64,000 bases of DNA from Diplonema japonicum. Its lineage: Eukaryota; Protista; Euglenozoa: Diplonemea. The notes under the pieces were generated by a model. It had not been told where the DNA came from. It was given only the letters and a program-made list of their open reading frames with translations, and ran no database searches. The DNA lies in the NCBI GenBank assembly GCA_964019335.1, contig OZ025750.1, forward strand, positions 1-64,000. Reading direction: 5' to 3'. This document shows positions 1,780-47,986 of this stretch, in pieces; the first letter of the stretch is position 1, and each line of letters begins with the position of its first letter. Position numbers and translations under genes: made by a program.

Positions 1780-1979
1780 TGGAGATGAGAACATATATTA
1801 TAGTGCGACATGATCAGACTGGAACGGCCGCCCCGGGGCATCCTCTGCTCAACCCGGCGGACGTGGGAGGCCCTTCTTCGGAAGGTGCCAGTCGCTTGAT
1901 CAGTGTCGTCGAATGCGCGCTGTATTTTATATTTTATAAGTACATATAACAATCGATTGAAAGAAGAAGAACGTTTACC
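1780..1979 (+). mobile_element. Short structured element family A (copy 1)
   Basis: Near-identical to 39067-39265; structured core at 1817-1893. Confidence 0.8.
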
Positions 1980-14129: not shown

Positions 14130-14370
14130 TGTTTTTCGGTCCCGGGTATGACGTTAAACTGCGTCCGCCAACGCGTCTGAACCAGCACTTCCTGGCGACC
14201 AGGCCGTCTTTTTTTCTCTTTTCTTTTTCCGCTTCGTTCTGTTATTTTCATATTCTTTCCGGCTATAGACTGATACGGGCCTATTCCTGGTACGTGGGAG
14301 GCTCCTCTTGAGGATGTCAGTCACCTTTATTCTTTTTTATTCGACTCTCTGTTTTCGTATGCAGTATTTA
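14130..14370 (+). mobile_element. Short structured element family B (copy with deleted arm)
   Basis: Aligns to 41650-41908; core 14268-14322 lacks the GCA-ACCTC-TGC arm. Confidence 0.7.
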
Positions 14371-18031: not shown

Positions 18032-19186
18032 ATGAACGATATGACAGTGTTCGTGAAGACGGAAGGCGGGGTCCACAATGTGGAAGTGTCGGGGAAGGAG
18101 ACGGTGGGGAACCTGTACAAGAAGGCGGGGTGTGCTGCTGGTTTACTCGAAGGCAAGTTCAAACTGGTTTTGGAAGGGGAAGTCCTGGACAAGAACGGCG
18201 GTAAAGAGCTTCAGGAGCTTGGGCTCGTGGAGGGCTCCGTGGTCCATGTGGAGGCGAAGATGAGAACAGTTCGTCTGGAGGAGCTGAAGGACGAGAATTC
18301 AGAAGTACTTTCGGAGCTTGAGGGTCTTGTGTCAGCTGACCCTGAGCTGGTTCTGGTGGTGGAGGTGGGGGACTCGCCAGATGTCGGGGACTTGTTCATG
18401 AAATGGACAAACCTTCCTTCTGCTCTTCGGTTCCTCGTTGTCACCGACTCCACAGGCTGTGTTACAAGTATAGACGAAACTTTTCTTCAATATTGCAACA
18501 ACCTGAGATCTGTCGATCTCATCCTCCCCAATGTTTCTACCATTCAATGCGATATCTTAAAGAGCTGCTTCTCACTGGTATTCGTCGACTTGAGTTCGAT
18601 GACCAAAATAGCTTCCATTGATGATTCCTTCCTGTCAAGGTGCCACAAACTAGAAACCATCAACTTGAATGCGATGACCAATCTTAATTCTATTGGTGAT
18701 GATTTCTTGTCTGGGTGCATCAATTTAAGAACCATCAACTTGAATGCGATGACCAATGTTAATTCTATTGGTTCTCACTTCTTGTATGGTTGTGAAAACC
18801 TTGAAACCATCAATTTGAGTTCGATGACCAATCTTAATTCTATTGGTGCTGAATTCTTGAATGGTTGCAAGAAACTAAAAACCATCAACCTAAATGCGAT
18901 GACCAATCTTTCTTCCGTTGGGAGTGGCTTCTTGTTTAGTTGCAAGAAACTAGAAACCATCGACTTGAGTTCAGCAACCAATCTCTTTTCTATTGGTTCT
19001 TACTTTTTAGATGGCTGCGAAAATGTAGCTGCCATCTACCTGAGTTCGACCAATATTTCTTCCATTGGTTCTCACTTCTTGTCAGGGTGCGAAAAACTTG
19101 AAACCATCGTTTTGAGGGGAGGGGGTGATAATTTTAACAGTCTCTTAAAGGCACAGATACCAACGGGGGTAACAATACAGAAATAA
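18032..19186 (+). CDS. Ubl-LRR protein
   Basis: N-terminal MTVFVKT..LVLEGEVL Ubl, linker, then 22-aa LRRs LETINLNAMTNLNSIGxxFLxGC; paralog of 45087. Confidence 0.9.
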   Translation: MNDMTVFVKTEGGVHNVEVSGKETVGNLYKKAGCAAGLLEGKFKLVLEGEVLDKNGGKELQELGLVEGSVVHVEAKMRTVRLEELKDENSEVLSELEGLVSADPELVLVVEVGDSPDVGDLFMKWTNLPSALRFLVVTDSTGCVTSIDETFLQYCNNLRSVDLILPNVSTIQCDILKSCFSLVFVDLSSMTKIASIDDSFLSRCHKLETINLNAMTNLNSIGDDFLSGCINLRTINLNAMTNVNSIGSHFLYGCENLETINLSSMTNLNSIGAEFLNGCKKLKTINLNAMTNLSSVGSGFLFSCKKLETIDLSSATNLFSIGSYFLDGCENVAAIYLSSTNISSIGSHFLSGCEKLETIVLRGGGDNFNSLLKAQIPTGVTIQK

Positions 19187-20314: not shown

Positions 20315-21540
20315 CTGTAAAACAAAAATCCACCGGAAGATAAAATATCCGGACCGCCGAAACATCCGGTGGTTTCTTCCGGACATTTTATCTTCCGGAC
20401 ATTCTTTTGGGCACTTTTCTAAGGGGGTACCTAGCCTGACCTACGCACTGCCCCCTCTGTCTGGAAAACTTATATTTCTGTTGCAAGAGTCTTAAGAACG
20501 GCAAAAATAAAATTCAAATTAACTCCAGCCTTTTGGGGGGTGCAACACGAGGGACGGACCCGAGGTATTTCCTGCCGCGAGCTGGTTCTGTTTTTCCCGT
20601 GTAAATTAGCTGCGGGTGCAGTTTGCCACCAGTCAGGGAAACGCAAAACTGTCCGGTGACGGCGCGCTTGTCCTAAATCCCTAACCTTGACAACCTTGGG
20701 ACCCCTTTTCGTCTTCTTCCCAGCGGCAGCAGCTGGTCCATGTTCCAGGTCAACCGGCCTGATCTTTGTGAACCTCCTCGCTGCTTGGGTGTCTTTGGGG
20801 CTGCTAGACTTCCCTATTGTTGTCGGCTTGTGATGCCATGCTTGGAGCACAGCTGGTTGGCCCTCTGCATACAGGCAGATGTCCGACGCTGCTACCGGCA
20901 CCCCCCTTCCGTTCTGCATCTGGATCTAAACAAAGAGCCTTGTTGTTTCTTCCTAGTTCAGAAGAGGCTTGCGACCCGCAGTAACGGGTGCGGCAGGGGG
21001 ATCGACCTTGGAGCTACCAAAGCGGTGCTTCCAGTCTGATATACTGGACATTGGCTCCATGACGCAAACCCGCAAAAAATAAGAACAACCCTAAAGCAAG
21101 CACAAGAAATGGTTTGGTTCAACAAGCTTGTGGTAGAAGCAAACAATCAGGATCTGAGGTGTCTTTTAGTTCTTGGAAAAGTCCGTAATTCAATTCTCTG
21201 ATTTTTGTTTGATTTTCTCTTGCTATAGAAACTAGTTTCATCTGTTTTCGGGTCCAGCCCTTTAATAAAAGGGGGGTCCCAGGAAAAAAAGGAAGAAAAA
21301 ATATCCGGACCGCCAGAGCTTCCGGACATTATCCTTCGAACGGCCGCCCCGGGGCATCCTCTGCTCAACCCGGCGGACGTGGGAGGCCCTTCTTCGGAAG
21401 GTGCCAGTCGCTTGATCAGTGTCGTCGAATGCGCGCTATATTTTATATTTTATAAATACAGATAACAATCGATTGAAAGAAGAAGAACGTTTACCTAGAG
21501 CTTCCGGACATTTTTTCTTCCGGTGATTTTTGTTTAACAG
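20315..21540 (-). mobile_element. pogo-type transposon relative, decayed, carrying a nested family A insertion
   Basis: TA-CTGTAAAACAAAAATC ... GATTTTTGTTTAACAG-TA; KTKRGPKVVKVRDLG matches KTKRGAKVVKVRGLG of the 9288 element. Confidence 0.8.
21331..21496 (+). mobile_element. Family A element with target-site duplication
   Basis: Flanked by AGAGCTTCCGGACATT at 21315-21330 and 21497-21512. Confidence 0.85.
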
Positions 21541-30303: not shown

Positions 30304-30793
30304 ACCCCCCCCCTCCCATAGGGCGGCCCTCTAGCGGGGGGCTTGTCCTGTACTTTGAGTTTTTTTTAACGTCGCCCCAGTAGATAGTACAGTGCACAGG
30401 GCGCCACCAACACTGACTTCCTTTGTCTCGTATTTAATGTGTTCTGCCGATGTTGTTCTGTTATTTCAGATGAGCTTTCTCATTTTAAAGAGAGAGAAAG
30501 AAAAAGAGATTTCCTTCCTACCTTCCTTCATTTTCTATCTGCTTTCTTTTTTTTCTTTTTTTCTTTTATAGACAAAAGATAAACAAGCAAATCATCTTTC
30601 ACACATTTCAGCAACCTTCTTGTTCGGCAACAGTGGTTCGTGTCTAAGAAGGCCCACGACGATATCCAGTTCACCACTTCCTGGGGGGCAAAAAGAAAAG
30701 AAAAAAAAGAACAGCGGTGAGAGAAAGCAACAAATAAAAATACCCAAAAAAAAAAAAAGATTTTCCTTTTTTTGGGGAGAAAAAAAAAAGAAA

Positions 30794-31981
30794 ATGCCAA
30801 CACTAACCCTTCAAATGAAGGCACCTTGCGGGACAGTGAGCGTGGAGGTGGAAGGAGGCGACAAGATAGAAACACTAAAGGCGATGACCGCCTCGTCAAC
30901 AGGGTTGGATGTGGAGTACCTCACGCTGGTATTCGAGGGAGAAGAGCTGAAGGAAGGCAACAAAGTGTGCGACTACCCCTTTGCAGAACAGAGCGAGGTG
31001 GTGGTGACACCGAGCAAAAAACAAATCGCCATGGATCTCCTGAAAATGAAGGGATGGACCGACCCGTGGACAGTAGCTCTGATCCGCGACATGAACGACA
31101 GTGTGGACAACATGGAGAGAAGGTGCGTTGACGAAAAGTACTGTTTAATCCTCGCGGTGATGTGCGAGGGTGGAATGTGCGATGACAAGGAAGCAATGGG
31201 TGAGGTTCTGTACCACACAGCCGACTGGAACCTCCCCGAATGCCTGGAGCTGCTGCTGTCACGCGTTTCTACTGACGCTAGCACAACATACGCCCTCTTC
31301 GGTGCTGTCCTCGGCAGCCACATAGACTGCATGCGCGTACTTCTAGAACACAAGGCAGACGTGAATAATAAATGCTTCGGAACATGCGCCCCACTGCACT
31401 ATGCTGCGAAGGACGGGAAAGACGAGTGCATGCGGCTTTTGTTCGATCACAACGCGGACCCAAATGTCCGTGACAGGAACAGGCAGACACCGCTGCACTG
31501 TGCGGTGTTGAAGCCTCATGAAGAATGCGTCAAGATCCTTCTTGAGCATAATGCGGAATCTGATGCAAAGGATCTTGACGGGAACACACCGCTTCATCTA
31601 GCGATCGACGCGCTGGATGGGGATTCGCAGCTAACGCATCTGAGCGCCTTGCTCGGGTACCACGCCGACCCTAATTTACGGGACAACCAGGGGAGGACAG
31701 CTTTGCATCTTGCAGCGTTGAAGGGTCACGAGGAATGCGCCCGGCTTCTCCTTGACCACCGTGCGGAGCTCAACGCGAGGGATCTTGACGGCAACACACC
31801 ACTGCACCTCGCAACAGACAGGGAACAACAGCTGCGTCTCGCACGGGCGCTGATCGATTACCGCGCGGACCCCAATCTGCGGAACAACAAAGGAGACACG
31901 CCACTGCACCTTGCAACGTCGCGTAATAATGAAGCTCTGATGGGGCTTCTCACCCAGTGTTCGCGAGAGCCCGGGTTGTGA
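30794..31981 (+). CDS. Ubl-ankyrin repeat protein
   Basis: ATG at 30794 with Ubl (LVFEGEELKEG); ankyrin repeats TPLH.A...G...C..LL.H.AD.N. Confidence 0.92.
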   Translation: MPTLTLQMKAPCGTVSVEVEGGDKIETLKAMTASSTGLDVEYLTLVFEGEELKEGNKVCDYPFAEQSEVVVTPSKKQIAMDLLKMKGWTDPWTVALIRDMNDSVDNMERRCVDEKYCLILAVMCEGGMCDDKEAMGEVLYHTADWNLPECLELLLSRVSTDASTTYALFGAVLGSHIDCMRVLLEHKADVNNKCFGTCAPLHYAAKDGKDECMRLLFDHNADPNVRDRNRQTPLHCAVLKPHEECVKILLEHNAESDAKDLDGNTPLHLAIDALDGDSQLTHLSALLGYHADPNLRDNQGRTALHLAALKGHEECARLLLDHRAELNARDLDGNTPLHLATDREQQLRLARALIDYRADPNLRNNKGDTPLHLATSRNNEALMGLLTQCSREPGL

Positions 31982-36100: not shown

Positions 36101-37505
36101 ATTGCCTACAAAGGACACACCCTAGACCCTTACTCTTCGGTGGTCTATAAAGCCATTTCGCCCCTAGGTCGCCTGTGCACACGACAGTCGAACAAGTCCC
36201 TATTCGAGTCGGGCTGGGAAACTTACAAGTACGCAAAGGAGCGAGATGGAACGCCGTCGCTTTCGAAGGGGCCATTTGGTAATGCGGAAATATGGCTACG
36301 GGACATCGGGACGAGATGGAAGGACTTTATTAAAGAGTTGCCACGGGGCATGCCACACCTGAAACACGAGGTCAGAGCGCGGTTGAAAGAAAAACTGCGG
36401 GGCGAGCTCGCCGAAGAGCGGGACACTTTCAAAGGAATCGAGACAGGAGTGGACGAGATGAAGACGAACGTCCTACACAACGAGGTGGCGATCACCAACC
36501 CGCAGAAAGCGAGGAGAATCCTTTGTGCCGTTACTGGCGCCATCCTTCCACTGCACCCTAGAGCCTACGGCGACATGGATGGCACGCGAACGAAATGCCT
36601 TGGGTGTGACGCACCCTTCGACATTAGAGGCGGGACCAGCAACCTCCTGCTGCACTACAATTTGGCACTGCCCGGCACACGCCGGTTTTAGAACGGCCAA
36701 CGCCGACCGCGAATGGCTAGTGCAAGAACACACTAACTGGCCAACCTGCACCCGCGTACACGGCATCATTACCTCGGACTTGGACATCAGCCTATTGAGA
36801 GTCAAGGAGCTCCACCTGATGCTAGCAGAAGTGGCAGGCAAGCTCGAGAACCTGCACGCCGACAAGCAGGTCAGGTACACGAACCAGCATTTCTGGAATA
36901 GACCATTCCGACCGGGGAACCTCTTAACCCCGAAGCCTCTCCCCTGGTACCACGAACATGGGCTGCAGAAGAAATACTTCCCAGGCCTAATCCCATTTGT
37001 CCTCAACTGGCTGAACGCCCTAAAATGGGGCGAGGAAGGCGGGCAAGTTTCGAAGGCGGAACTAGCAGTCGACCTCATAGCAACGGAAAGGCTCCACATG
37101 GGTGGGGAAGACATAGCGTGCTGGGCGAGAAAGCTCGGCAGGATTCTCAGCGTCTTAGAAAGGATCCATCTAAAAGGGACGGGGAATCATCTGATTCCGG
37201 CAGAAACTATGAAGTCAGTACACTCACTACGCACCCTAGGGCTCCACAGCCATGCCGTCACTGGCTACTCCACTCGTCCGATCTTCGCATCCCCGAAGGT
37301 CACCCACTCGATCCTAGAGGAACAAATGCGCACGCATTGCATCCTCAACAACTCGCTAGTTGGTTTCACGCCCAAGCTGCTGATGAGATACTACGACGGG
37401 CCTAAGGCACTACCACGACAGAAGGGATCAAACACTAGATGAATTGATTGTCGTTAGGCGATCCTGTCACATACTGCAGGTTCCCTTCAAAGACATCTTC
37501 TTTTA
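33110..37505 (+). mobile_element. 5'-truncated family 2 non-LTR retrotransposon with complete but frameshifted ORF2
   Basis: Linker plus GDIHPNPGP (33323-33349); APE (LQET, TGDFN, PDYIL); RT (HRPIT, QFGFRP, VDFKKGFD, LQGCPIS, YADD); C-terminal WLNALKW..VSKAELAVD. Confidence 0.92.
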
Positions 37506-37625
37506 GGGGGGAGGGCGGGGTACACTTACTTTTATTTTCCTGTATTGCTTTCATTTTCTTTGTCTCTTGTTTGTTCTCTGATTGAACTTGTAACACAGTC
37601 GGGTGGGGGGGAGTGTGCTACGAGT

Positions 37626-39500
37626 ATGCTGAAGACGACAACATGTCTGCTCTGTGCAGCGATGCTGCTGCACGGCAGCACAGCAGTGCAGGTCGACGCT
37701 GTCTACAGGGAAGCACCAGACTTTGCAAACCACCAGCACAGCTGCTTCAACGATGCCTCATGATGCAAGTGCACAGCTGACATGGATGATGACAGGGCTG
37801 AAGAGAACCGACGGGGATACTCTTGAGTCCTTGATGGTTATCAAGCGACCGACGAGAAGCGTGAGGAAGGAATTCGCCCTACAGGGGGGACAGCGTCGTG
37901 CCCTGCCGACATGCTTCTTAACGGCATGCACCGAACGAGTTGTGACCCCCTTGACTGTGTGGACCAGTTCGAATGCTGTCAGTTCGTTCCCTCAGTCGGG
38001 ACCTTCGTCATGGACACGCCTGTCAACTTTTCTTGGGAAGCATGCATGGACACCTGGAACAATTGGTGTGATGCAGACGCGGACCACCTCGTGGCGGGTT
38101 GGTCATTGGCGCACGCCCACGGCTGTGCCCACGGCGGCGCCGCCCACTGCTGAGCCGACGGCAGAGCCAACATCCGCTCCACCTACGGCAGGGCCCACAG
38201 CAGCACCGCCCACTGCTGAGCCAACTGCAGAGCCCACATCCGCTCCTCCAACTGCAGCCCTTCCCACAACAGCACCGCGTACAAGCGCTCCCCCTACAGC
38301 AGCCAACTGCAGGCCTCGTACCTTTGCACCGCTGACAACAACTGTGGATTTGACATCTTTCACCAACGTTGCCTCAATTGGGTGTGACTTCCTGTCTAAG
38401 TGCTCTGGATTGCAAACCGTGGATTTGACATCCTTCACCAACGTTACCACCATTGACGATAGCTTCATGTTTGAATGCTGTAAATTGCAAACCGTGGATT
38501 TGACATCCTTCACCAACGTTACCACCATTGGCCATGGCTTCCTGTCTGAATGCTCTGGATTACAAACCGTGGATTTGACAGCCTTCACCAACGTCACCAC
38601 CATTGGCAGTTGGTTCTTGTCTGAATGCTCTGGATTGAAAACCATGGACTTGACATCCTTCACCAACGTTGCCTCAATTGGCCGTTCCTGTCTTCGTGCC
38701 CGAGATTGCAAACCGTGGATTTGACAGCCTTCACCACTATTGGCAATAGCTTCCTGTCTTCATGCTCTGGATTGCAAACCGTGGATTTGACATCCTTCAC
38801 CAACGTCACCATTGGCAATGGCTTCTTGTCTCTGGATTGCAAACCGTGGACTTGACAGTCTTCACCAACGTTACCACCATTGGCTATTGCTTCCTGTATT
38901 CGTGCTCTGGATTGCAATCCGTGGATTTGACACCCTTCACCAACGTCACCACCATTGGCCATTGCTTCCTGACTTCGTGCTCTGGATTACAAACCGTGGA
39001 TTTGACATCCTTCACCAACGTCTCCACCCATTGGCAATGGCTTCTTCTCTGAATGCTTTTCTCCTTGGAGATGAGAACATATATTATAGTGCGACATGAT
39101 CAGACTGGAACGGCCGCCCCGGGGCATCCTCTGCTCAACCCGGCGGACGTGGGAGGCCCTTCTTCGGAAGGTGCCAGTCGCTTGATCAGTGTCGTCGAAT
39201 GCGCGCTATATTTTATATTTTATAAATACAGATAACAATCGATTGAAAGAAGAAGAACGTTTACCAATGGCTTCTTCTCTGAATGCTCTGAATTGCAAAC
39301 CGTGGATTTGACATTGGTTGGCAATGGCTTCCTGTATTCGTGCTCTGGATTGCAAACCTTGGATTTGACATCCTTCACCAACGTTACCTCAATTGGTGAT
39401 AACTTCCTGTCTTCGTGCCCGAGATTGCAGAACATCACGGCTTCGTCACTTCCCGAAAACCACATCCTGGGGAGCTTCTTAACAATAAATAAAAAAAAAA
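37626..39500 (+). pseudogene. Chimeric pseudogene: signal peptide, Cys-rich domain, PTA stalk, LRR array
   Basis: MLKTTTCLLCAAMLLHGSTA; in-frame stops and frameshifts; PTAEPTSAPPTA repeats at ~38110-38340; 66-bp LRR units from ~38340. Confidence 0.75.
39058..39265 (+). mobile_element. Family A element, complete (~208 bp) with 22-23 bp TSD
   Basis: (C)AATGGCTTCTTCTCTGAATGCT duplicated at 39035-39057 and 39265-39287 inside an LRR unit. Confidence 0.9.
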
Positions 39501-41085: not shown

Positions 41086-41649
41086 AAAAAAAAAAAAAAA
41101 AAAGCCATTAGCCAACTGTGGAAAGAGAATTCCCATGTCACAAAAGGCGCTAGAACAATAACACAGGCCGACACGAAAGCACGAACGTCTCAACACACTT
41201 CCGTTGGCTCCACACAGCCCAGCTGGGTGGGGTCGGTCTGGCTAGACCAAGAGGAGGTGGAATTTTAAAATAATAAAAAAAAAAAACCTTAGTTTCATTT
41301 TCGAGTTGAGGTTTTAGATGCTCACAATTTTCGCCAAAGATTCCTTCCCTTCTTGTGAAGCGAGAAAAATATAAAACTTCTTCGTCTCTCATGTTTAGCA
41401 GTCCCTCCCCCCACTTTCTTTCTTTCTTTTTCCCCATCCTCTTTTCACCTCTTCCCCCTACTGTGCTGAACTCCTACAACTAGGAACTACTGGAGACGAC
41501 CCTACGCAATGTAGGAGTGCCGGCCCGGCGTGCTACGAGGGTGATAGGCTATGCAGGGTCTCACAGACCTCGCACCCTATGATTTTAGTTTCCACCTTTT
41601 CCTTTTCCACTTCTTGACTTTTAACTTCCCTTCTGCTCTCCCGACATGG

Positions 41650-41908
41650 TTTCCGTCCCGGGTATGACGTTAAACTGCGTCCGCCGACGCATTTGGGTCA
41701 ACATTCTCTGATGACCAAGCCGTCTTTTTCCGTTTCTTCTCCCCTTCTCTTTGTTATGTTATTTTCATTATTCTTTCTGGCGATAGACTGATACGGGCCA
41801 TGGAAGCAACCTCTGCTTAATTCCTGGTACGTGGGAGGCTCCTCTTGAGGATGTCAGTCACCTTTTCCCTTTTTTACTCGACTCTCTGTTTTCGTATGCA
41901 GTATTTAT
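41650..41908 (+). mobile_element. Short structured element family B (intact core 41786-41859)
   Basis: Aligns to 14130-14370; core is homologous in fold to the family A core. Confidence 0.75.
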
Positions 41909-42541
41909 TCTTTCCCACCCCCTTTTTATCTATTTCTTCGCTTCTTCATCCTAACTTAAAACCATTTCAGCTACCTCCCCGTGATGTGGCCCAACTGGCA
42001 GCGGTTTGCATAGCGCAAGAGCGCCTAAACTATGGCTCGCAAACTAGTCAACTTTGGGGAGCATCAACTCACATGCAACAATCTTACCTAACTCATAGAA
42101 AGCGGTATTCCCAAGCACTGCTTCAGTTGGCCTGTCATCTCTTATTTGGACGAAGAAGCGCTCGTTCTTTACATGCCCTCTCAGTTTCAGCTACCACTGA
42201 TCACAAACCTGCAAGAAACATGAGGGAAAAAAAAATAAAGTTACTTTTATTTTTTTGATGTTTCTCGCTAAAACAAGGGAAAATATAAATAAAGTCTACT
42301 TTATTTATAGGGTCCCCAGCCAAAAACACTAGGGAGGGGGGGGGCAAAAAGATAAAATAAAAAAAAAAGAAAAAAAAAATGCCTACTCGAAGACCCTGAG
42401 TCGAACGTGCACAACCTGTGCCTCACGCAAGCCGACTTCCGCACCGGCGATCGACAATTGAGCAGGTAATGCTCCTGTCCCAAACCTTGTGATTCCTCAC
42501 AAAAGGGGCAACCCCTGCCCCCCGTGGACCTACGAATATAA

Positions 42542-45086: not shown

Positions 45087-46268
45087 ATGAGCATCACAGT
45101 GTTTGTGAAGACGAAAGCAGGGGTTCACGATGTGGAAGTGGCTGGGACAGAGACAGTGGGAAGCCTGTACAGGAAAGCGGTGCGTGCTGCTGGCTTGCTT
45201 GAAAGGATGTTCAAACTGGTTTGGGAGGGAAAGGTGCTGAGCAGGTTTGGGGATGAAGATGTTCAGGGGACCGAGCTCGTGGAGGGGGCTGTTGTCGATG
45301 TGGTTCCGGGCACAGTGGTAGGGCTGACTGAGTTGAAGGAGAGTCCTGAAGTGAAACTGGAGCTTGAAAGGCTTGTGGCGGCAGACCCCGAGCTGGTTCT
45401 TGAGGTCGATGTAGGTGATTCGACAGACAAGGTGGTGTGCATGAAGCTGATGGACCTCCCTTATGGACTTCAGGGCCTCGTTGTCACCGACTCCACAAAC
45501 CGCGTCAGGGACATCGGTGATGATTTTCTTTCTGGTAGCCTTTGCTCACTGGAGTCTCTCGATTTGAAGTTGGAGCTCAACACCATTGGTGACAACTTCC
45601 TTAAATTCCTTAGCTCGTCGTCTATTAGCTTCGGGGATGCTAGTTTCCTTAACAATGTTACTTCTATCGGCGGTGGCTTCTTGTCGGACTCAGAATTGCA
45701 AACCGTGGATTTGACATCATTCACCAACGTTACCTCAATTGGCAATTCCTTCCTGTCTAGATGCTCTGAATTGCAAACCGTGGATTTGACATCCTTCACC
45801 AACGTCACCACCATTGGCGATCGCTTCCTGTCTTCATGCTCTGGATTGCAAACTGTGGATTTGGCAGTCTTCACCAACGTTACCTCAATTGGCATTTACT
45901 TCTTGTATTCATGCTCTGGATTGCAAACTGTGGATTTGACATCCTTCACCAACGTTACCACCATATGCGATGGCTTCCTGTCTTCATGCTCTGGGTTGCA
46001 AACCGTGGATTTGACATCCTTCACCAACGTTGCCTCAATTGGCGATGGCTTCCTGTCTTCATGCTCTGGATTACAAGCTGTGGATTTAACATCCTTCACC
46101 AACGTCACCAGCATTGGCGATTACTTCCTGTCTTCATGCTCTGGATTACAAGCTGTGGATTTAACATCCTGCACCAACGTCACCAGCATTGGCGATTACT
46201 TCCTGTCTTCATGCTCTGGATTGCAAACCGTTGATTTAACATCTTTCACCAACGTAACCTCAATTGGT
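45087..46268 (+). pseudogene. Ubl-LRR gene interrupted at its 3' end
   Basis: Paralog of 18032 in the N-terminus; ~9 LRR units of the 1980/38340 type; abrupt switch to unrelated sequence at ~46269. Confidence 0.85.
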
Positions 46269-47986
46269 GGACACGGACAGCCCGACCAGCGCAACGAGTA
46301 GCGAAAGTAGTGGAGTGATACCACCTGAACCACCCAGGGCACTACAACAAAAAGACACAGGCAAGAAAACCGCTAGCACAGAACCAAAGATCCTCACCGT
46401 CAAGCGTCTTAACGACAAAACTGAAAAGGAGACCGGCCACACCAAAACTACGTGCAGCCATAAGGGAATGGTGCACTCCCGGCTGGCTCCAAGCAATTAT
46501 AAACGCGGCGAGAAAACCACGGGAAGTACCCACAAAGGCCCCTACACCTCCGACGAAGGAACAACCGACGGCAAGGCAGCCAACGCGTAGGGCAGCACAA
46601 CCGACGGAGGAACAAGGACCAGTGCCAAAGCCGCAGCAACCAGCGCAAGCTAACAAGGAACCGCAACAGCCAACACAAAGAACGGCAGCCACCACGCCGA
46701 CACCGAGCAAGGCCAGCAAGGAACCGCAGCCACAGAAACAACAAACGCTGACGTCAATAAGAACACTGTCGCCAAAAACTATAAAGCCGATGCCGACGGC
46801 ACTACCGCCAACAGCACACGACAGCCGGCACCACCAAGACCAACACGACATGAACAACAGGGCCCGTACAGGGCTACCAGACTGGCAACAGCCAACACCG
46901 ATAAGGACAGCACCAAACACACACGAACAACCACAACCGCCAGGTTGGTATACAAGGTACAACCAGGCAAGTTGGCAACATCCAAGCTGTCACCAGCCAA
47001 GGAATGATCAACCAAGTTGGCACCAACCATACAGACACCAACCAAGTTGGCAACAGCCAAGCTGGCAAGCAAAGCACGACCAGCCAAGATGGCACCGGCC
47101 AAAGAACGACCAACCAAGCCGGTACCAACCATACAAACAACAGACAAGCTGGCAGACAAACACGACCAACCAAGTACCACATCAAAGTCAGCTCCACCAC
47201 CGACACCACAGACAGCTGCAACTACAACCCGAACTAACGAGAAGAAAGAGCCTGCAGAAGCGAAAGCAAGAAGAACAAGCCCGTAAAGAAGATAAACCGA
47301 ATGAAGAAGAAAAAGACAAGCCAGAAGAAAAAACGAAAACACACACGCCGCAGAAAAAGGAGACAATAGTAAGAGAGGAAGACACCCCCCAGACTATACA
47401 CTCCTGCACTTCAACAAAAAGCCAAAAGACAACATCGAACGTTGCACTCAATGAAAGCTCAGCCGCCACAAGAATGGAGACACCTCGCACACCGCAAGCC
47501 ACGCCGACGACGGAGACACCTGAGCAAGTACACGAGGACAAAAATACACTCCCCACCAGCACCACCCCTATACCGGATACAACACAGGTGACAACACCCC
47601 CCAAGGAACAAACACCTGAACCAAAAGCGATGACACCTTTAGAGATAAACTTTACCGTAACGCCACTACCACTTACCACCAGCCCTCCAGAGGAAACTGC
47701 GAACCATGACGAAAATCTCCCTACGCCTGCACCAGTTCAAGCCCCCACACCCACAATGGCTCTTACTCCGGCCCATACCCCTACGCCTGCAATAACATCC
47801 ACCCCGCTACCCCCGAACCCCACCAACCTGGACAGCAACACGATCACGACGCCCCCAAGGAACAAATCCTATGACAGTACCCCTTCGAAGACTCCCTCAA
47901 AGAGCATAGTACACCTGGAAGTACACCACGTGAACATACACATACGGGGAGTCCTACAGAAAGGAGCACCTCAACGGTCAGTATAA
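46269..47986 (+). other. Low-complexity Q/P/T-rich ORF region with QPSW repeats, probably part of the adjacent mobile element
   Basis: Long A/C-rich open frames (46264-46590, 46622-47986); no domain recognised. Confidence 0.4.

What the first reader, a model, noticed from the sequence alone, without database searches (positions are those of the whole stretch)
41786..41859. Unassigned ~75-nt covarying, probably pseudoknotted RNA motif shared by two repeat families
Seen: family A core (1817-1893, 39103-39179): gactgg a acg g ccg cc ccggg gca tcctc tgc tcaa cccgg cgg a cgt gggagg c ccttc ttcg gaagg tg ccagtc. Family B core: gactga t acg g gcca t ggaa gca acctc tgc ttaa ttcc tggt a cgt gggagg c tcctc tt gagga tg tcagtc. 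Most stems change sequence while keeping pairing (gactgg/ccagtc vs gactga/tcagtc; ccggg/cccgg vs ggaa/ttcc; ccttc/gaagg vs tcctc/gagga), whereas the loop CCTC, the tYaa bulge, GGGAGG and the final TG are conserved. CCTC can pair with GAGG to form a pseudoknot across a three-way junction, and a cUUCGg tetraloop marks + as the likely RNA strand. Flanks of A and B do not align. By eye it does not fit hammerhead, HDV, twister or pistol consensus. Inference: candidate new self-cleaving ribozyme or RT-recruiting structure of mobile RNAs.
Basis: partly seen in the sequence, partly recalled or inferred. Interest (0 to 1): 0.85.

Follow-up and report, generated by a model that had tools for sequence, protein, structure and literature searches.

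The report
Conserved folded RNA in LINE tails
Two distantly related jumping-gene (LINE) families of a marine protist keep the same ~75-letter folded RNA in their 3' untranslated tails. It is most likely the handle their copying enzyme grips, not a self-cutting RNA, so this is a new example of a known strategy.

Summary
Family A cores are at 1817-1893 and 39103-39179, and the family B core is at 41786-41859. A 5'-truncated A copy ends at 21409, and a B copy with an internal deletion is at 14268-14321.

Both families fold into the same three-way junction of 25 base pairs. Nine pairs differ on both sides, none is broken, and RNAalifold finds the same fold on its own. The unpaired CCUC, UYAA, GGGAGGC and UG are identical. 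The CCUC:GAGG pseudoknot never varies, so it cannot be tested. Rfam and ARAGORN give no match.

The motif is not a free-standing element. It lies in the sense-strand 3'UTR of two non-LTR retrotransposon families: 87 nt (A) or 305 nt (B) after the ORF stop, and 87 or about 110 nt before a precise, poly(A)-less 3' end. The ORF C-termini are only 28% identical, yet subfamilies keep the motif at 100% while UTR flanks are 77-97% identical. A non-autonomous family shares only this 3' region with A. Copy 5' ends are scattered, with no pile-up at the motif.

Best reading (0.55): a recognition handle for the element's reverse transcriptase, comparable to R2 3'UTRs. A new ribozyme is unlikely (0.07) but not excluded. 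Earlier scan notes on other DNA of this genome (s1-858164, s1-867067) describe similar folds.

The parts
41786..41859 (+). Family B core motif (74 nt). P1 is 6 bp. A long bent hairpin follows: P2 3 bp, a G/A mismatch, P2a 4 bp, a U bulge, P2b 4 bp, a UUAA bulge, P2c 3 bp and the loop ACCUC. Then come the junction GGGAGGC, hairpin P3 (UCCU-CUUG-AGGA, or 5 bp), and UG.
   Evidence: (91.4 bits)
41460..41970 (+). 5'-truncated copy of LINE family B. It holds the last ORF codons with the TAG stop at 41481-41483, the 3'UTR, and the precise end ...CCATTTCAG at 41970.
   Evidence: contigs of other runs match from 41460
41498..41545 (+). 'Module 1', a second conserved 3'UTR module shared by A and B. It is a hairpin CCUAC-GCAAU-GUAGG (CUUAC-GCAA-GUAAG in A, one compensatory pair), followed by GUGCYGGCCCGGCGWGCUACGAGGG.
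41860..41970 (+). Family B tail. It is pyrimidine-rich and ends in UCCUAAC...CAG. The first bases, ACCU, match the family's own target-site preference.
1817..1893 (+). Family A core motif (77 nt), with the same architecture. P3 is closed by a C(UUCG)G tetraloop.
   Evidence: (105.9 bits)
1780..1979 (+). 5'-truncated copy of LINE family A, ending ...GTTTACC. No target-site duplication was found.
39103..39179 (+). Family A core motif, second full copy.
39058..39265 (+). 5'-truncated family A copy inserted in a BspA-type LRR gene. It is flanked by a 23-bp target-site duplication (39035-39057 and 39265-39287).
21338..21409 (+). Family A motif lacking the 5' strand of P1. The copy is truncated inside the motif. 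The copy runs 21331-21495 and has a 16-bp duplication (21315-21330 and 21497-21512).
   Evidence: 80.8 bits
14268..14322 (+). Old family B copy whose motif has lost 19 nt (P2b 3' side, P2c and loop). This is decay after insertion.
   Evidence: 55.1 bits
3325..3403 (+). Remnant of a family A motif (5' half only).

Best explanation
The motif is a cis-acting structured RNA domain in the 3'UTR of two related but deeply diverged non-LTR retrotransposon (LINE) families. Its most likely role is as the specific handle by which the element's own protein (reverse transcriptase plus an orphan C-terminal domain) recognises its template RNA and positions it for target-primed reverse transcription.

This would let elements that have no poly(A) tail, and that are probably transcribed inside host polycistrons, start cDNA synthesis at a fixed 3' end: ...GTTTACC in A and ...CATTTCAG in B.

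Shown here:
- the fold is under selection;
- it lies on the sense strand of the 3'UTR;
- it is the best conserved part of the UTR;
- it is shared by a non-autonomous partner family;
- the copies bear target-site duplications, 5' truncation and precise 3' ends.

Inferred: protein binding, the role in initiation, and the CCUC:GAGG pseudoknot.
For: 1. Selection on structure. There are 9 fully compensatory pairs of 25 and none broken, with P<5e-6 under random placement. The tool count and RNAalifold agree.

2. Context. In A the ORF stop is 87 nt before the motif and in B it is 305 nt before. The common 3' ends are sharp. Target-site duplications are 8-29 bp. Copy 5' ends are scattered.

3. Family A encodes an RVT_1 reverse transcriptase whose nearest solved relatives are R2 proteins, at E 4.5e-8.

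4. The A and B ORF C-termini are 28% identical over 174 aa, whereas the motif's unpaired bases are identical. Subfamily comparisons give the motif 100% identity, against 79-96% upstream and 77-97% downstream.

5. A non-autonomous family (L061, L064-L067, L079, L082, L090) shares with LINE A exactly the stretch from module 1 to the 3' end.

6. The motif-less LINEs of the window show no similarity to the A/B C-terminal domain. Protein domain and RNA motif therefore co-occur.

7. Strand. The UUCG and CUUG tetraloops, one G-U pair in B, and the sense orientation with the ORF all point to the + strand RNA.

8. Precedent. Vertebrate R2 proteins bind a roughly 65-nt pseudoknot-hinge-stem-loop of the 3'UTR, with a purine-rich hinge read base-specifically, and compensatory mutations restore activity (PMC11601368).
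Against: - There is no direct evidence of protein binding.
- The motif lies 87-110 nt from the 3' end, whereas the R2 element lies a few nt from the start site.
- Only two independent sequence families exist. All other hits are copies or decayed copies, so R-scape-type statistics are not possible.
- No homologue was found outside this genome.
- Folding energies are no better than those of shuffled sequences.
- The A/B co-occurring protein domain is an orphan. Its predicted model is unusable, with pLDDT 36.
- No endonuclease domain was recognised in family A.
Confidence: 0.55

Rival explanations
1. The motif is an RNA processing, stability or localisation element. It might protect the 3' part of the LINE RNA, help cut it out of a polycistronic precursor, direct export, or direct packaging by a protein other than the RT.
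For: All copies in the window, and nearly all on each contig, point the same way as the host genes. The elements are therefore probably co-transcribed and need processing. The elements lack poly(A). The B tail ends in a branch-point-like UCCUAAC followed by CAG.
Against: No copy ends or begins preferentially at the motif. The non-autonomous family keeps the motif together with the tail, which is what an RT handle predicts. No known processing motif matches.
Confidence: 0.2
2. The motif is a translation element. It could be a 3' cap-independent translation enhancer, or a signal acting on termination or re-initiation, for an RNA that may lack the spliced-leader cap.
For: It is a three-way junction with a G-rich junction strand facing a C-rich loop. 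From my own knowledge, this recalls the plant-virus PTE class of 3' enhancers. The element lies in the 3'UTR of an mRNA.
Against: Nothing was tested. The non-coding partner family keeps the motif although it has nothing comparable to translate. No Rfam match.
Confidence: 0.08
3. The motif is a new class of small self-cleaving ribozyme.
For: It is compact, pseudoknot-capable, conserved and embedded in retrotransposons. Retrotransposons are where HDV-like, hammerhead and twister ribozymes occur (PMC8501958). Earlier scan notes report predicted HDV-like heads on other LINEs of this genome. Its P3-like 3-bp stem, UCCUC loop and following GG superficially recall the HDV P3/L3/P1.1 arrangement.
Against: No ribozyme family matches at E<=10. 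The strand order here is outer helix, then hairpin, then junction, then hairpin, then outer helix. That is a nested junction, not the HDV double pseudoknot, and the two bases before the closing strand are UG with no catalytic C in B. The hammerhead core is absent. There is no pile-up of copy ends at or in the motif. Cleavage 90-110 nt from the 3' end would detach the priming tail from the coding RNA.
Confidence: 0.07
4. The motif has no function of its own. It is a module recently exchanged between A and B by template switching, and it hitch-hikes.
For: The unpaired bases are 100% identical although the ORFs are only 28% identical. These elements often insert into one another.
Against: A recent transfer would not leave 18 differences that all fall in matched pairs with none unpaired. 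The motif is also invariant among subfamilies whose flanks have diverged.
Confidence: 0.05

Closest known systems
R2 retrotransposon 3'UTR RNA (pseudoknot-hinge-stem-loop bound by R2 protein; PMC11601368)
   Same: Both are structured domains of about 65-75 nt in the sense-strand 3'UTR of a non-LTR element without poly(A). Both include a (possible) pseudoknot, a purine-rich single strand and a terminal stem-loop. In both, primary sequence diverges between lineages while the architecture is kept. The family A RT is nearest to R2 proteins among solved structures.
   Different: No sequence or Rfam similarity. The topology differs: here it is a three-way junction closed by a 6-bp helix. The motif lies 87-110 nt from the 3' end rather than a few nt. 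The elements are not rDNA-specific and show no recognised RLE or zinc-knuckle endonuclease module. Binding is untested.
Stringent LINE/SINE 3' tails (for example eel UnaL2/UnaSINE1 stem-loop, Bombyx SART1 3'UTR; my own knowledge, and background in PMC5135761)
   Same: The LINE and a non-autonomous partner share the 3' region that holds the conserved structure. The 3' end is precise and has no poly(A).
   Different: Those signals are simple terminal stem-loops next to short repeats. This one is a larger internal junction fold, accompanied by a second module at the ORF stop.
HDV-like self-cleaving ribozymes of retrotransposons (R2, L1Tc, RTE)
   Same: Both occur in retrotransposons. Both have a 3-bp stem with a C-rich loop that can pair with Gs after the next helix, and a stable distal hairpin.
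   Different: The helix order does not give the nested double pseudoknot. There is no catalytic C before the closing strand. The motif is in the 3'UTR, not at the 5' end. No Rfam hit.
Earlier scan notes on the same genome: s1-858164 (pseudoknot plus closing helix in tails of five LINE families) and s1-867067 (74-letter covarying fold)
   Same: Same organism. Same idea of a covarying 3'UTR fold read as an RT handle. The 74-letter note may be another copy of family B.
   Different: I could not see their sequences. The window's other LINE 3'UTRs (30304-30570 and 37443-37650) do not match my model, so at least two different tail folds exist.

Membership tests
LINE 3'UTR recognition element (functional kind, not a sequence family) | Lies in the sense-strand 3'UTR of a non-LTR retrotransposon that shows TPRT hallmarks | tested here: met
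   ORF stop 87 or 305 nt upstream. RVT_1 in family A. Target-site duplications of 8-29 bp, 5' truncation and precise 3' ends.
LINE 3'UTR recognition element (functional kind, not a sequence family) | Structure conserved by compensatory change between diverged families | tested here: met
   9 double changes and 0 broken pairs of 25. Searches agree. Only two independent sequences exist.
LINE 3'UTR recognition element (functional kind, not a sequence family) | Shared with non-autonomous elements mobilised in trans | tested here: met
   Eight loci with an unrelated body share with LINE A exactly the stretch from module 1 through motif and tail.
LINE 3'UTR recognition element (functional kind, not a sequence family) | Bound by the element's RT and needed for TPRT | not testable with these tools
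   Needs protein-RNA binding and TPRT assays.
HDV-like ribozyme | Nested double pseudoknot in the order P1-P2-P3-L3-P3'-P1'-P1.1-P4-J4/2(C)-P2' | tested here: not met
   Read from the sequence. The strand that pairs with the 3' end comes before, not after, the strand that pairs after P3. An extra helix (CCGGG/CCCGG) lies between the P1-like and P3-like stems. J4/2 is UG. There are no HDV-family hits at E<=10.
HDV-like ribozyme | Sits at the 5' end of the element, so copies begin at the cleavage site | tested here: not met
   The motif is in the 3'UTR. Copy 5' ends are scattered.
Hammerhead, twister, twister-sister, pistol, hatchet | Match to the family covariance model or conserved core | tested here: not met
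   Rfam 15 gave nothing at the gathering threshold over the window, and nothing at E<=10 over 41700-41950 and 1740-2000.
R2 RNA element, UnaL2 3' element (Rfam families) | Match to the family covariance model | tested here: not met
tRNA or tRNA-like | Cloverleaf detectable by ARAGORN or the Rfam tRNA model | tested here: not met
   (0 genes)
   There is no motif upstream of the family A ORF in L120. The A RT is nearest to R2 and L1 proteins, with no TERT hit, and Pfam finds no GIY-YIG. The family B RT was not recovered.

The most novel reading that the evidence does not exclude
The motif is not merely a binding site but an active RNA. It could be a new class of self-cleaving ribozyme. Alternatively, it could be a fold that defines the 3' end of a poly(A)-less retrotransposon RNA cut out of a polycistronic transcript, for example together with the splice-acceptor-like end of the B tail.
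Probability: 0.1. Interest if true: 0.85.

Novelty: new member of a known kind. Interest (0 to 1): 0.45.

Why it matters
Specific 3'UTR recognition is how 'stringent' LINEs choose their own RNA. It is also the feature now exploited to build R2-based gene-insertion tools. Well-defined examples outside animals are few.

This is a compact fold with clear covariation, from a poorly known branch of eukaryotes (diplonemids). It belongs to RT-only elements with R2-like polymerases, precise ends and no poly(A). It pairs with an orphan C-terminal protein domain.

It offers a small, testable RNA-protein recognition pair, and a marker (a covariance model) for annotating these elements in other diplonemid genomes.

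Tried and rejected
- **Rfam.** Searches at the gathering and E<=10 thresholds found nothing relevant. ARAGORN found nothing.
- **Third family in this genome.** The covariance model gave 673 candidates, of which 150 were scored. All were A, B or decayed copies. Patterns that exclude the A and B stems or change the loop found only point-mutated A copies.
- **Public runs.** Only assembled contigs were available, so RNA starts and ends could not be seen. Contigs in two possibly-RNA runs match family B up to 41859 and then diverge. I first read this as tail swapping. I rejected that reading because B copies often insert into the ACCT site just after the motif of another B copy.
- **HDV-like threading by hand.** It fails on helix order and on the catalytic C.
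- **C-terminal domain.** Pfam, PDB sequence search, a library-wide phmmer search (2 hits, both close kin), an AlphaFold model (pLDDT 36, so not searched) and the ESM Atlas (scores <0.8) were all uninformative.
- **Method note.** Majority-rule strings of the 3'UTR only (at most 489 nt) were used inside one script to compare subfamilies. They were not printed.

Full report
**Observation.**
- The word CGTGGGAGGC occurs exactly five times, all on the + strand.
It finds two full A copies (1817-1893 and 39103-39179, 105.9 bits) and one full B copy (41786-41859, 91.4 bits).
- It also finds an A copy truncated inside the motif (21338-21409) and a B copy with a 19-nt internal deletion (14268-14322). 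Nothing else scores above 19 bits.

**Is the fold real?**
- Each core forms 25 standard pairs in six helical segments.
- Between A and B, 16 pairs are identical and 9 differ on both sides. None differs on one side only and none is broken.
- I placed the same 18 substitutions at random on the 50 paired positions 200,000 times. The mean was 11.5 broken pairs and the minimum was 2.
- On the unedited MAFFT alignment, the count of structure pairs gives 98% of cells paired, against 37-45% when partners are slid by 1-3 columns, and 7 double changes.
- RNAalifold, given no structure, returns the same three-way junction with 8 compensatory pairs.
- The unpaired bases are identical in both families: G11, CCUC in the loop, U-AA in the bulge, A45, GGGAGGC and UG.
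- Two caveats apply. There are only two independent sequences. Minimum free energies are no better than those of shuffles, with z of -0.7 and -0.2, and the single-sequence MFE of A prefers another pairing.
- The proposed CCUC:GAGG pseudoknot never varies, so covariation cannot test it. The only loop variant is CUUC in four copies, which would keep a G-U pair.
- For the loop to reach GAGG at the base of its own roughly 15-bp hairpin, the hairpin must fold back at the 4-nt UYAA bulge. That is feasible but unproven (my inference).

**What carries the motif?** It is not a free element.
- Family B has at least 93 exact copies of a 30-mer of the motif, and family A has 66. The model finds 673 candidates genome-wide.
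- Aligning the loci shows sharp common 3' ends. A ends ...GTTTACC, 87 nt after the motif. B ends ...CCATTTCAG, about 110 nt after it. There is no poly(A).
- The 5' extents are variable, with no pile-up at the motif.
- Target-site duplications are 8-29 bp (in the window 39035-39057/39265-39287 and 21315-21330/21497-21512).
- Upstream of the motif lies a long ORF that stops 87 nt (A) or 305 nt (B) before it.
- For A, 3.6 kb further upstream was fetched. It holds an RVT_1 domain whose nearest solved relatives are R2 retrotransposon proteins (E 4.5e-8), ahead of LINE-1 ORF2p.
- Homologues are RT-only proteins in many eukaryotes, including Diplonema papillatum. No endonuclease domain was recognised.
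- A and B are therefore non-LTR retrotransposons, and the motif is the centre of their 3'UTR on the sense strand.
- Earlier scan notes name the organism Diplonema japonicum. I did not verify that.

**Signs of function.**
- The A and B ORF C-termini are 28% identical over 174 aa, so the families are old. Yet the motif keeps its fold and every unpaired base.
- Within each family, subfamilies have identical motifs, while the UTR is 79-96% identical upstream and 77-97% downstream.
- A and B share a second small module beside the ORF stop. It is a hairpin with one compensatory pair plus a GC-rich stretch (window 41498-41545).
- A non-autonomous family (eight loci) has an unrelated body. It joins LINE A exactly at the start of that module and keeps module, motif and tail.
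- The two motif-less LINEs of the window (APE plus RT) show no similarity to the A/B C-terminal domain. RNA motif and protein domain therefore co-occur.
- That domain has a conserved core of about 90 aa. It is an orphan: 2 hits in 1.8 billion representatives, no Pfam or PDB match, an unusable model and no Atlas lead.

**Mechanism.** The best-supported reading is that the motif, with module 1, is the handle by which the element's protein selects its own RNA and sets it up for target-primed reverse transcription at a fixed 3' end.
- This is how stringent LINEs and R2 work. In vertebrate R2, a roughly 65-nt pseudoknot-hinge-stem-loop of the 3'UTR is gripped by several protein domains. A purine-rich hinge is read base-specifically, and compensatory mutations in the pseudoknot restore activity (PMC11601368).
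- The present fold has comparable ingredients: a possible pseudoknot, an invariant purine strand GGGAGG and a tetraloop hairpin. It is not homologous to the R2 element, and it sits 87-110 nt from the start site.
- I put this reading at 0.55.
- A role in RNA processing, stability or transport (0.2) is the main rival. The elements point the same way as host genes and must be cut out of long transcripts.
- A translation element (0.08), a new ribozyme (0.07) and a functionless exchanged module (0.05) follow.

**Ribozyme question.**
- No ribozyme family matches, even at E<=10.
- Threading onto the HDV-like fold fails. The strand that pairs with the 3' end precedes the P1-like strand. An extra helix separates the P1-like and P3-like stems. 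The joining strand before the closing helix is UG, without a C.
- Copies neither start nor end preferentially at the motif.
- Cleavage there would separate the coding RNA from its priming tail.
- A new catalytic class cannot be excluded without a bench test.

**Dead ends and limits.**
- No third family was found in the genome.
- The metagenome scan found nothing real.
- Public runs were available only as contigs, so RNA ends could not be read.
- Contigs that diverge right after 41859 are explained by B inserting into the ACCT site that follows the motif in other B copies.

**Verdict.** The RNA fold is real and under selection, and it is absent from Rfam. It belongs to the 3'UTR of two LINE families and one dependent family of a diplonemid. 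It is most likely a new member of the known kind 'LINE 3'UTR recognition RNA'. Interest is moderate at 0.45.

Noticed in passing
L054:1000-1530 (= G000:C85:119007-119610), also in L085: There are at least 13 tandem copies of a 47-nt unit. The unit is made of family A positions -31 to +11 (up to GACTGGAACG of the motif) plus TCACC. The array lies directly upstream of a complete A motif. Its origin is unexplained; RT template jumping at the base of the fold, or replication slippage, are possibilities.
   Followed up: partly
L099, L103 (G000:C31:105839-105915, C35:353715-353790; 7 copies score 88 bits): Older family A copies differ from young ones almost only by CpG to TpG or CpA changes. Two of these, in opposite strands of a stem, mimic a compensatory pair. 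This suggests CpG methylation and deamination in this genome. It is also a warning for covariation counts on decayed repeats.
   Followed up: partly
window 41860-41976 and B loci L001-L030: The family B tail is pyrimidine-rich. It ends in a branch-point-like UCCUAAC, then 16 nt, then CAG, like a 3' splice site. The duplicated target always begins NN(A/G)CC(T/C). B copies often insert into another B copy just after the motif (TC|ACCT), building stacks.
   Followed up: partly
window 1980, 39266, 21496 and A loci L031-L090: Family A ends ...GTTTACC. It is nearly always followed by AA(A/G)G, which indicates a different target preference from B. With the next A, the end reads ACCA, like a tRNA 3' end. 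This may be a coincidence.
   Followed up: no
L120:1292-3601 joined to L046:1-1450 (G000:C62:495990-499680): The family A coding region has an N-terminal Cys/His-rich stretch, then the RT, then about 1 kb of Pro/Val/Thr-rich tandem repeats open in two frames (a -1 shift is needed in this copy), then the orphan conserved C-terminal domain. No endonuclease was recognised, although copies have target-site duplications.
   Followed up: partly
window 39058-39265 and 1780-1979: Family A copies sit inside or next to BspA-type leucine-rich-repeat genes with 75-nt repeats (37654-38724 and 45087-46301). The 39-kb copy splits an LRR array.
   Followed up: no
window 18032-19186 and 30620-31981: Host genes fuse an N-terminal ubiquitin-like domain to BspA-type LRRs, and to ankyrin repeats (Pfam).
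   Followed up: no
window 30304-30400: The 3'UTR of the window's APE-type LINE begins with C-runs and G-runs (CCCCCCCCUCCC ... GGGCGGCCC ... GCGGGGGG) that could form another pseudoknot. It does not match my model.
   Followed up: no
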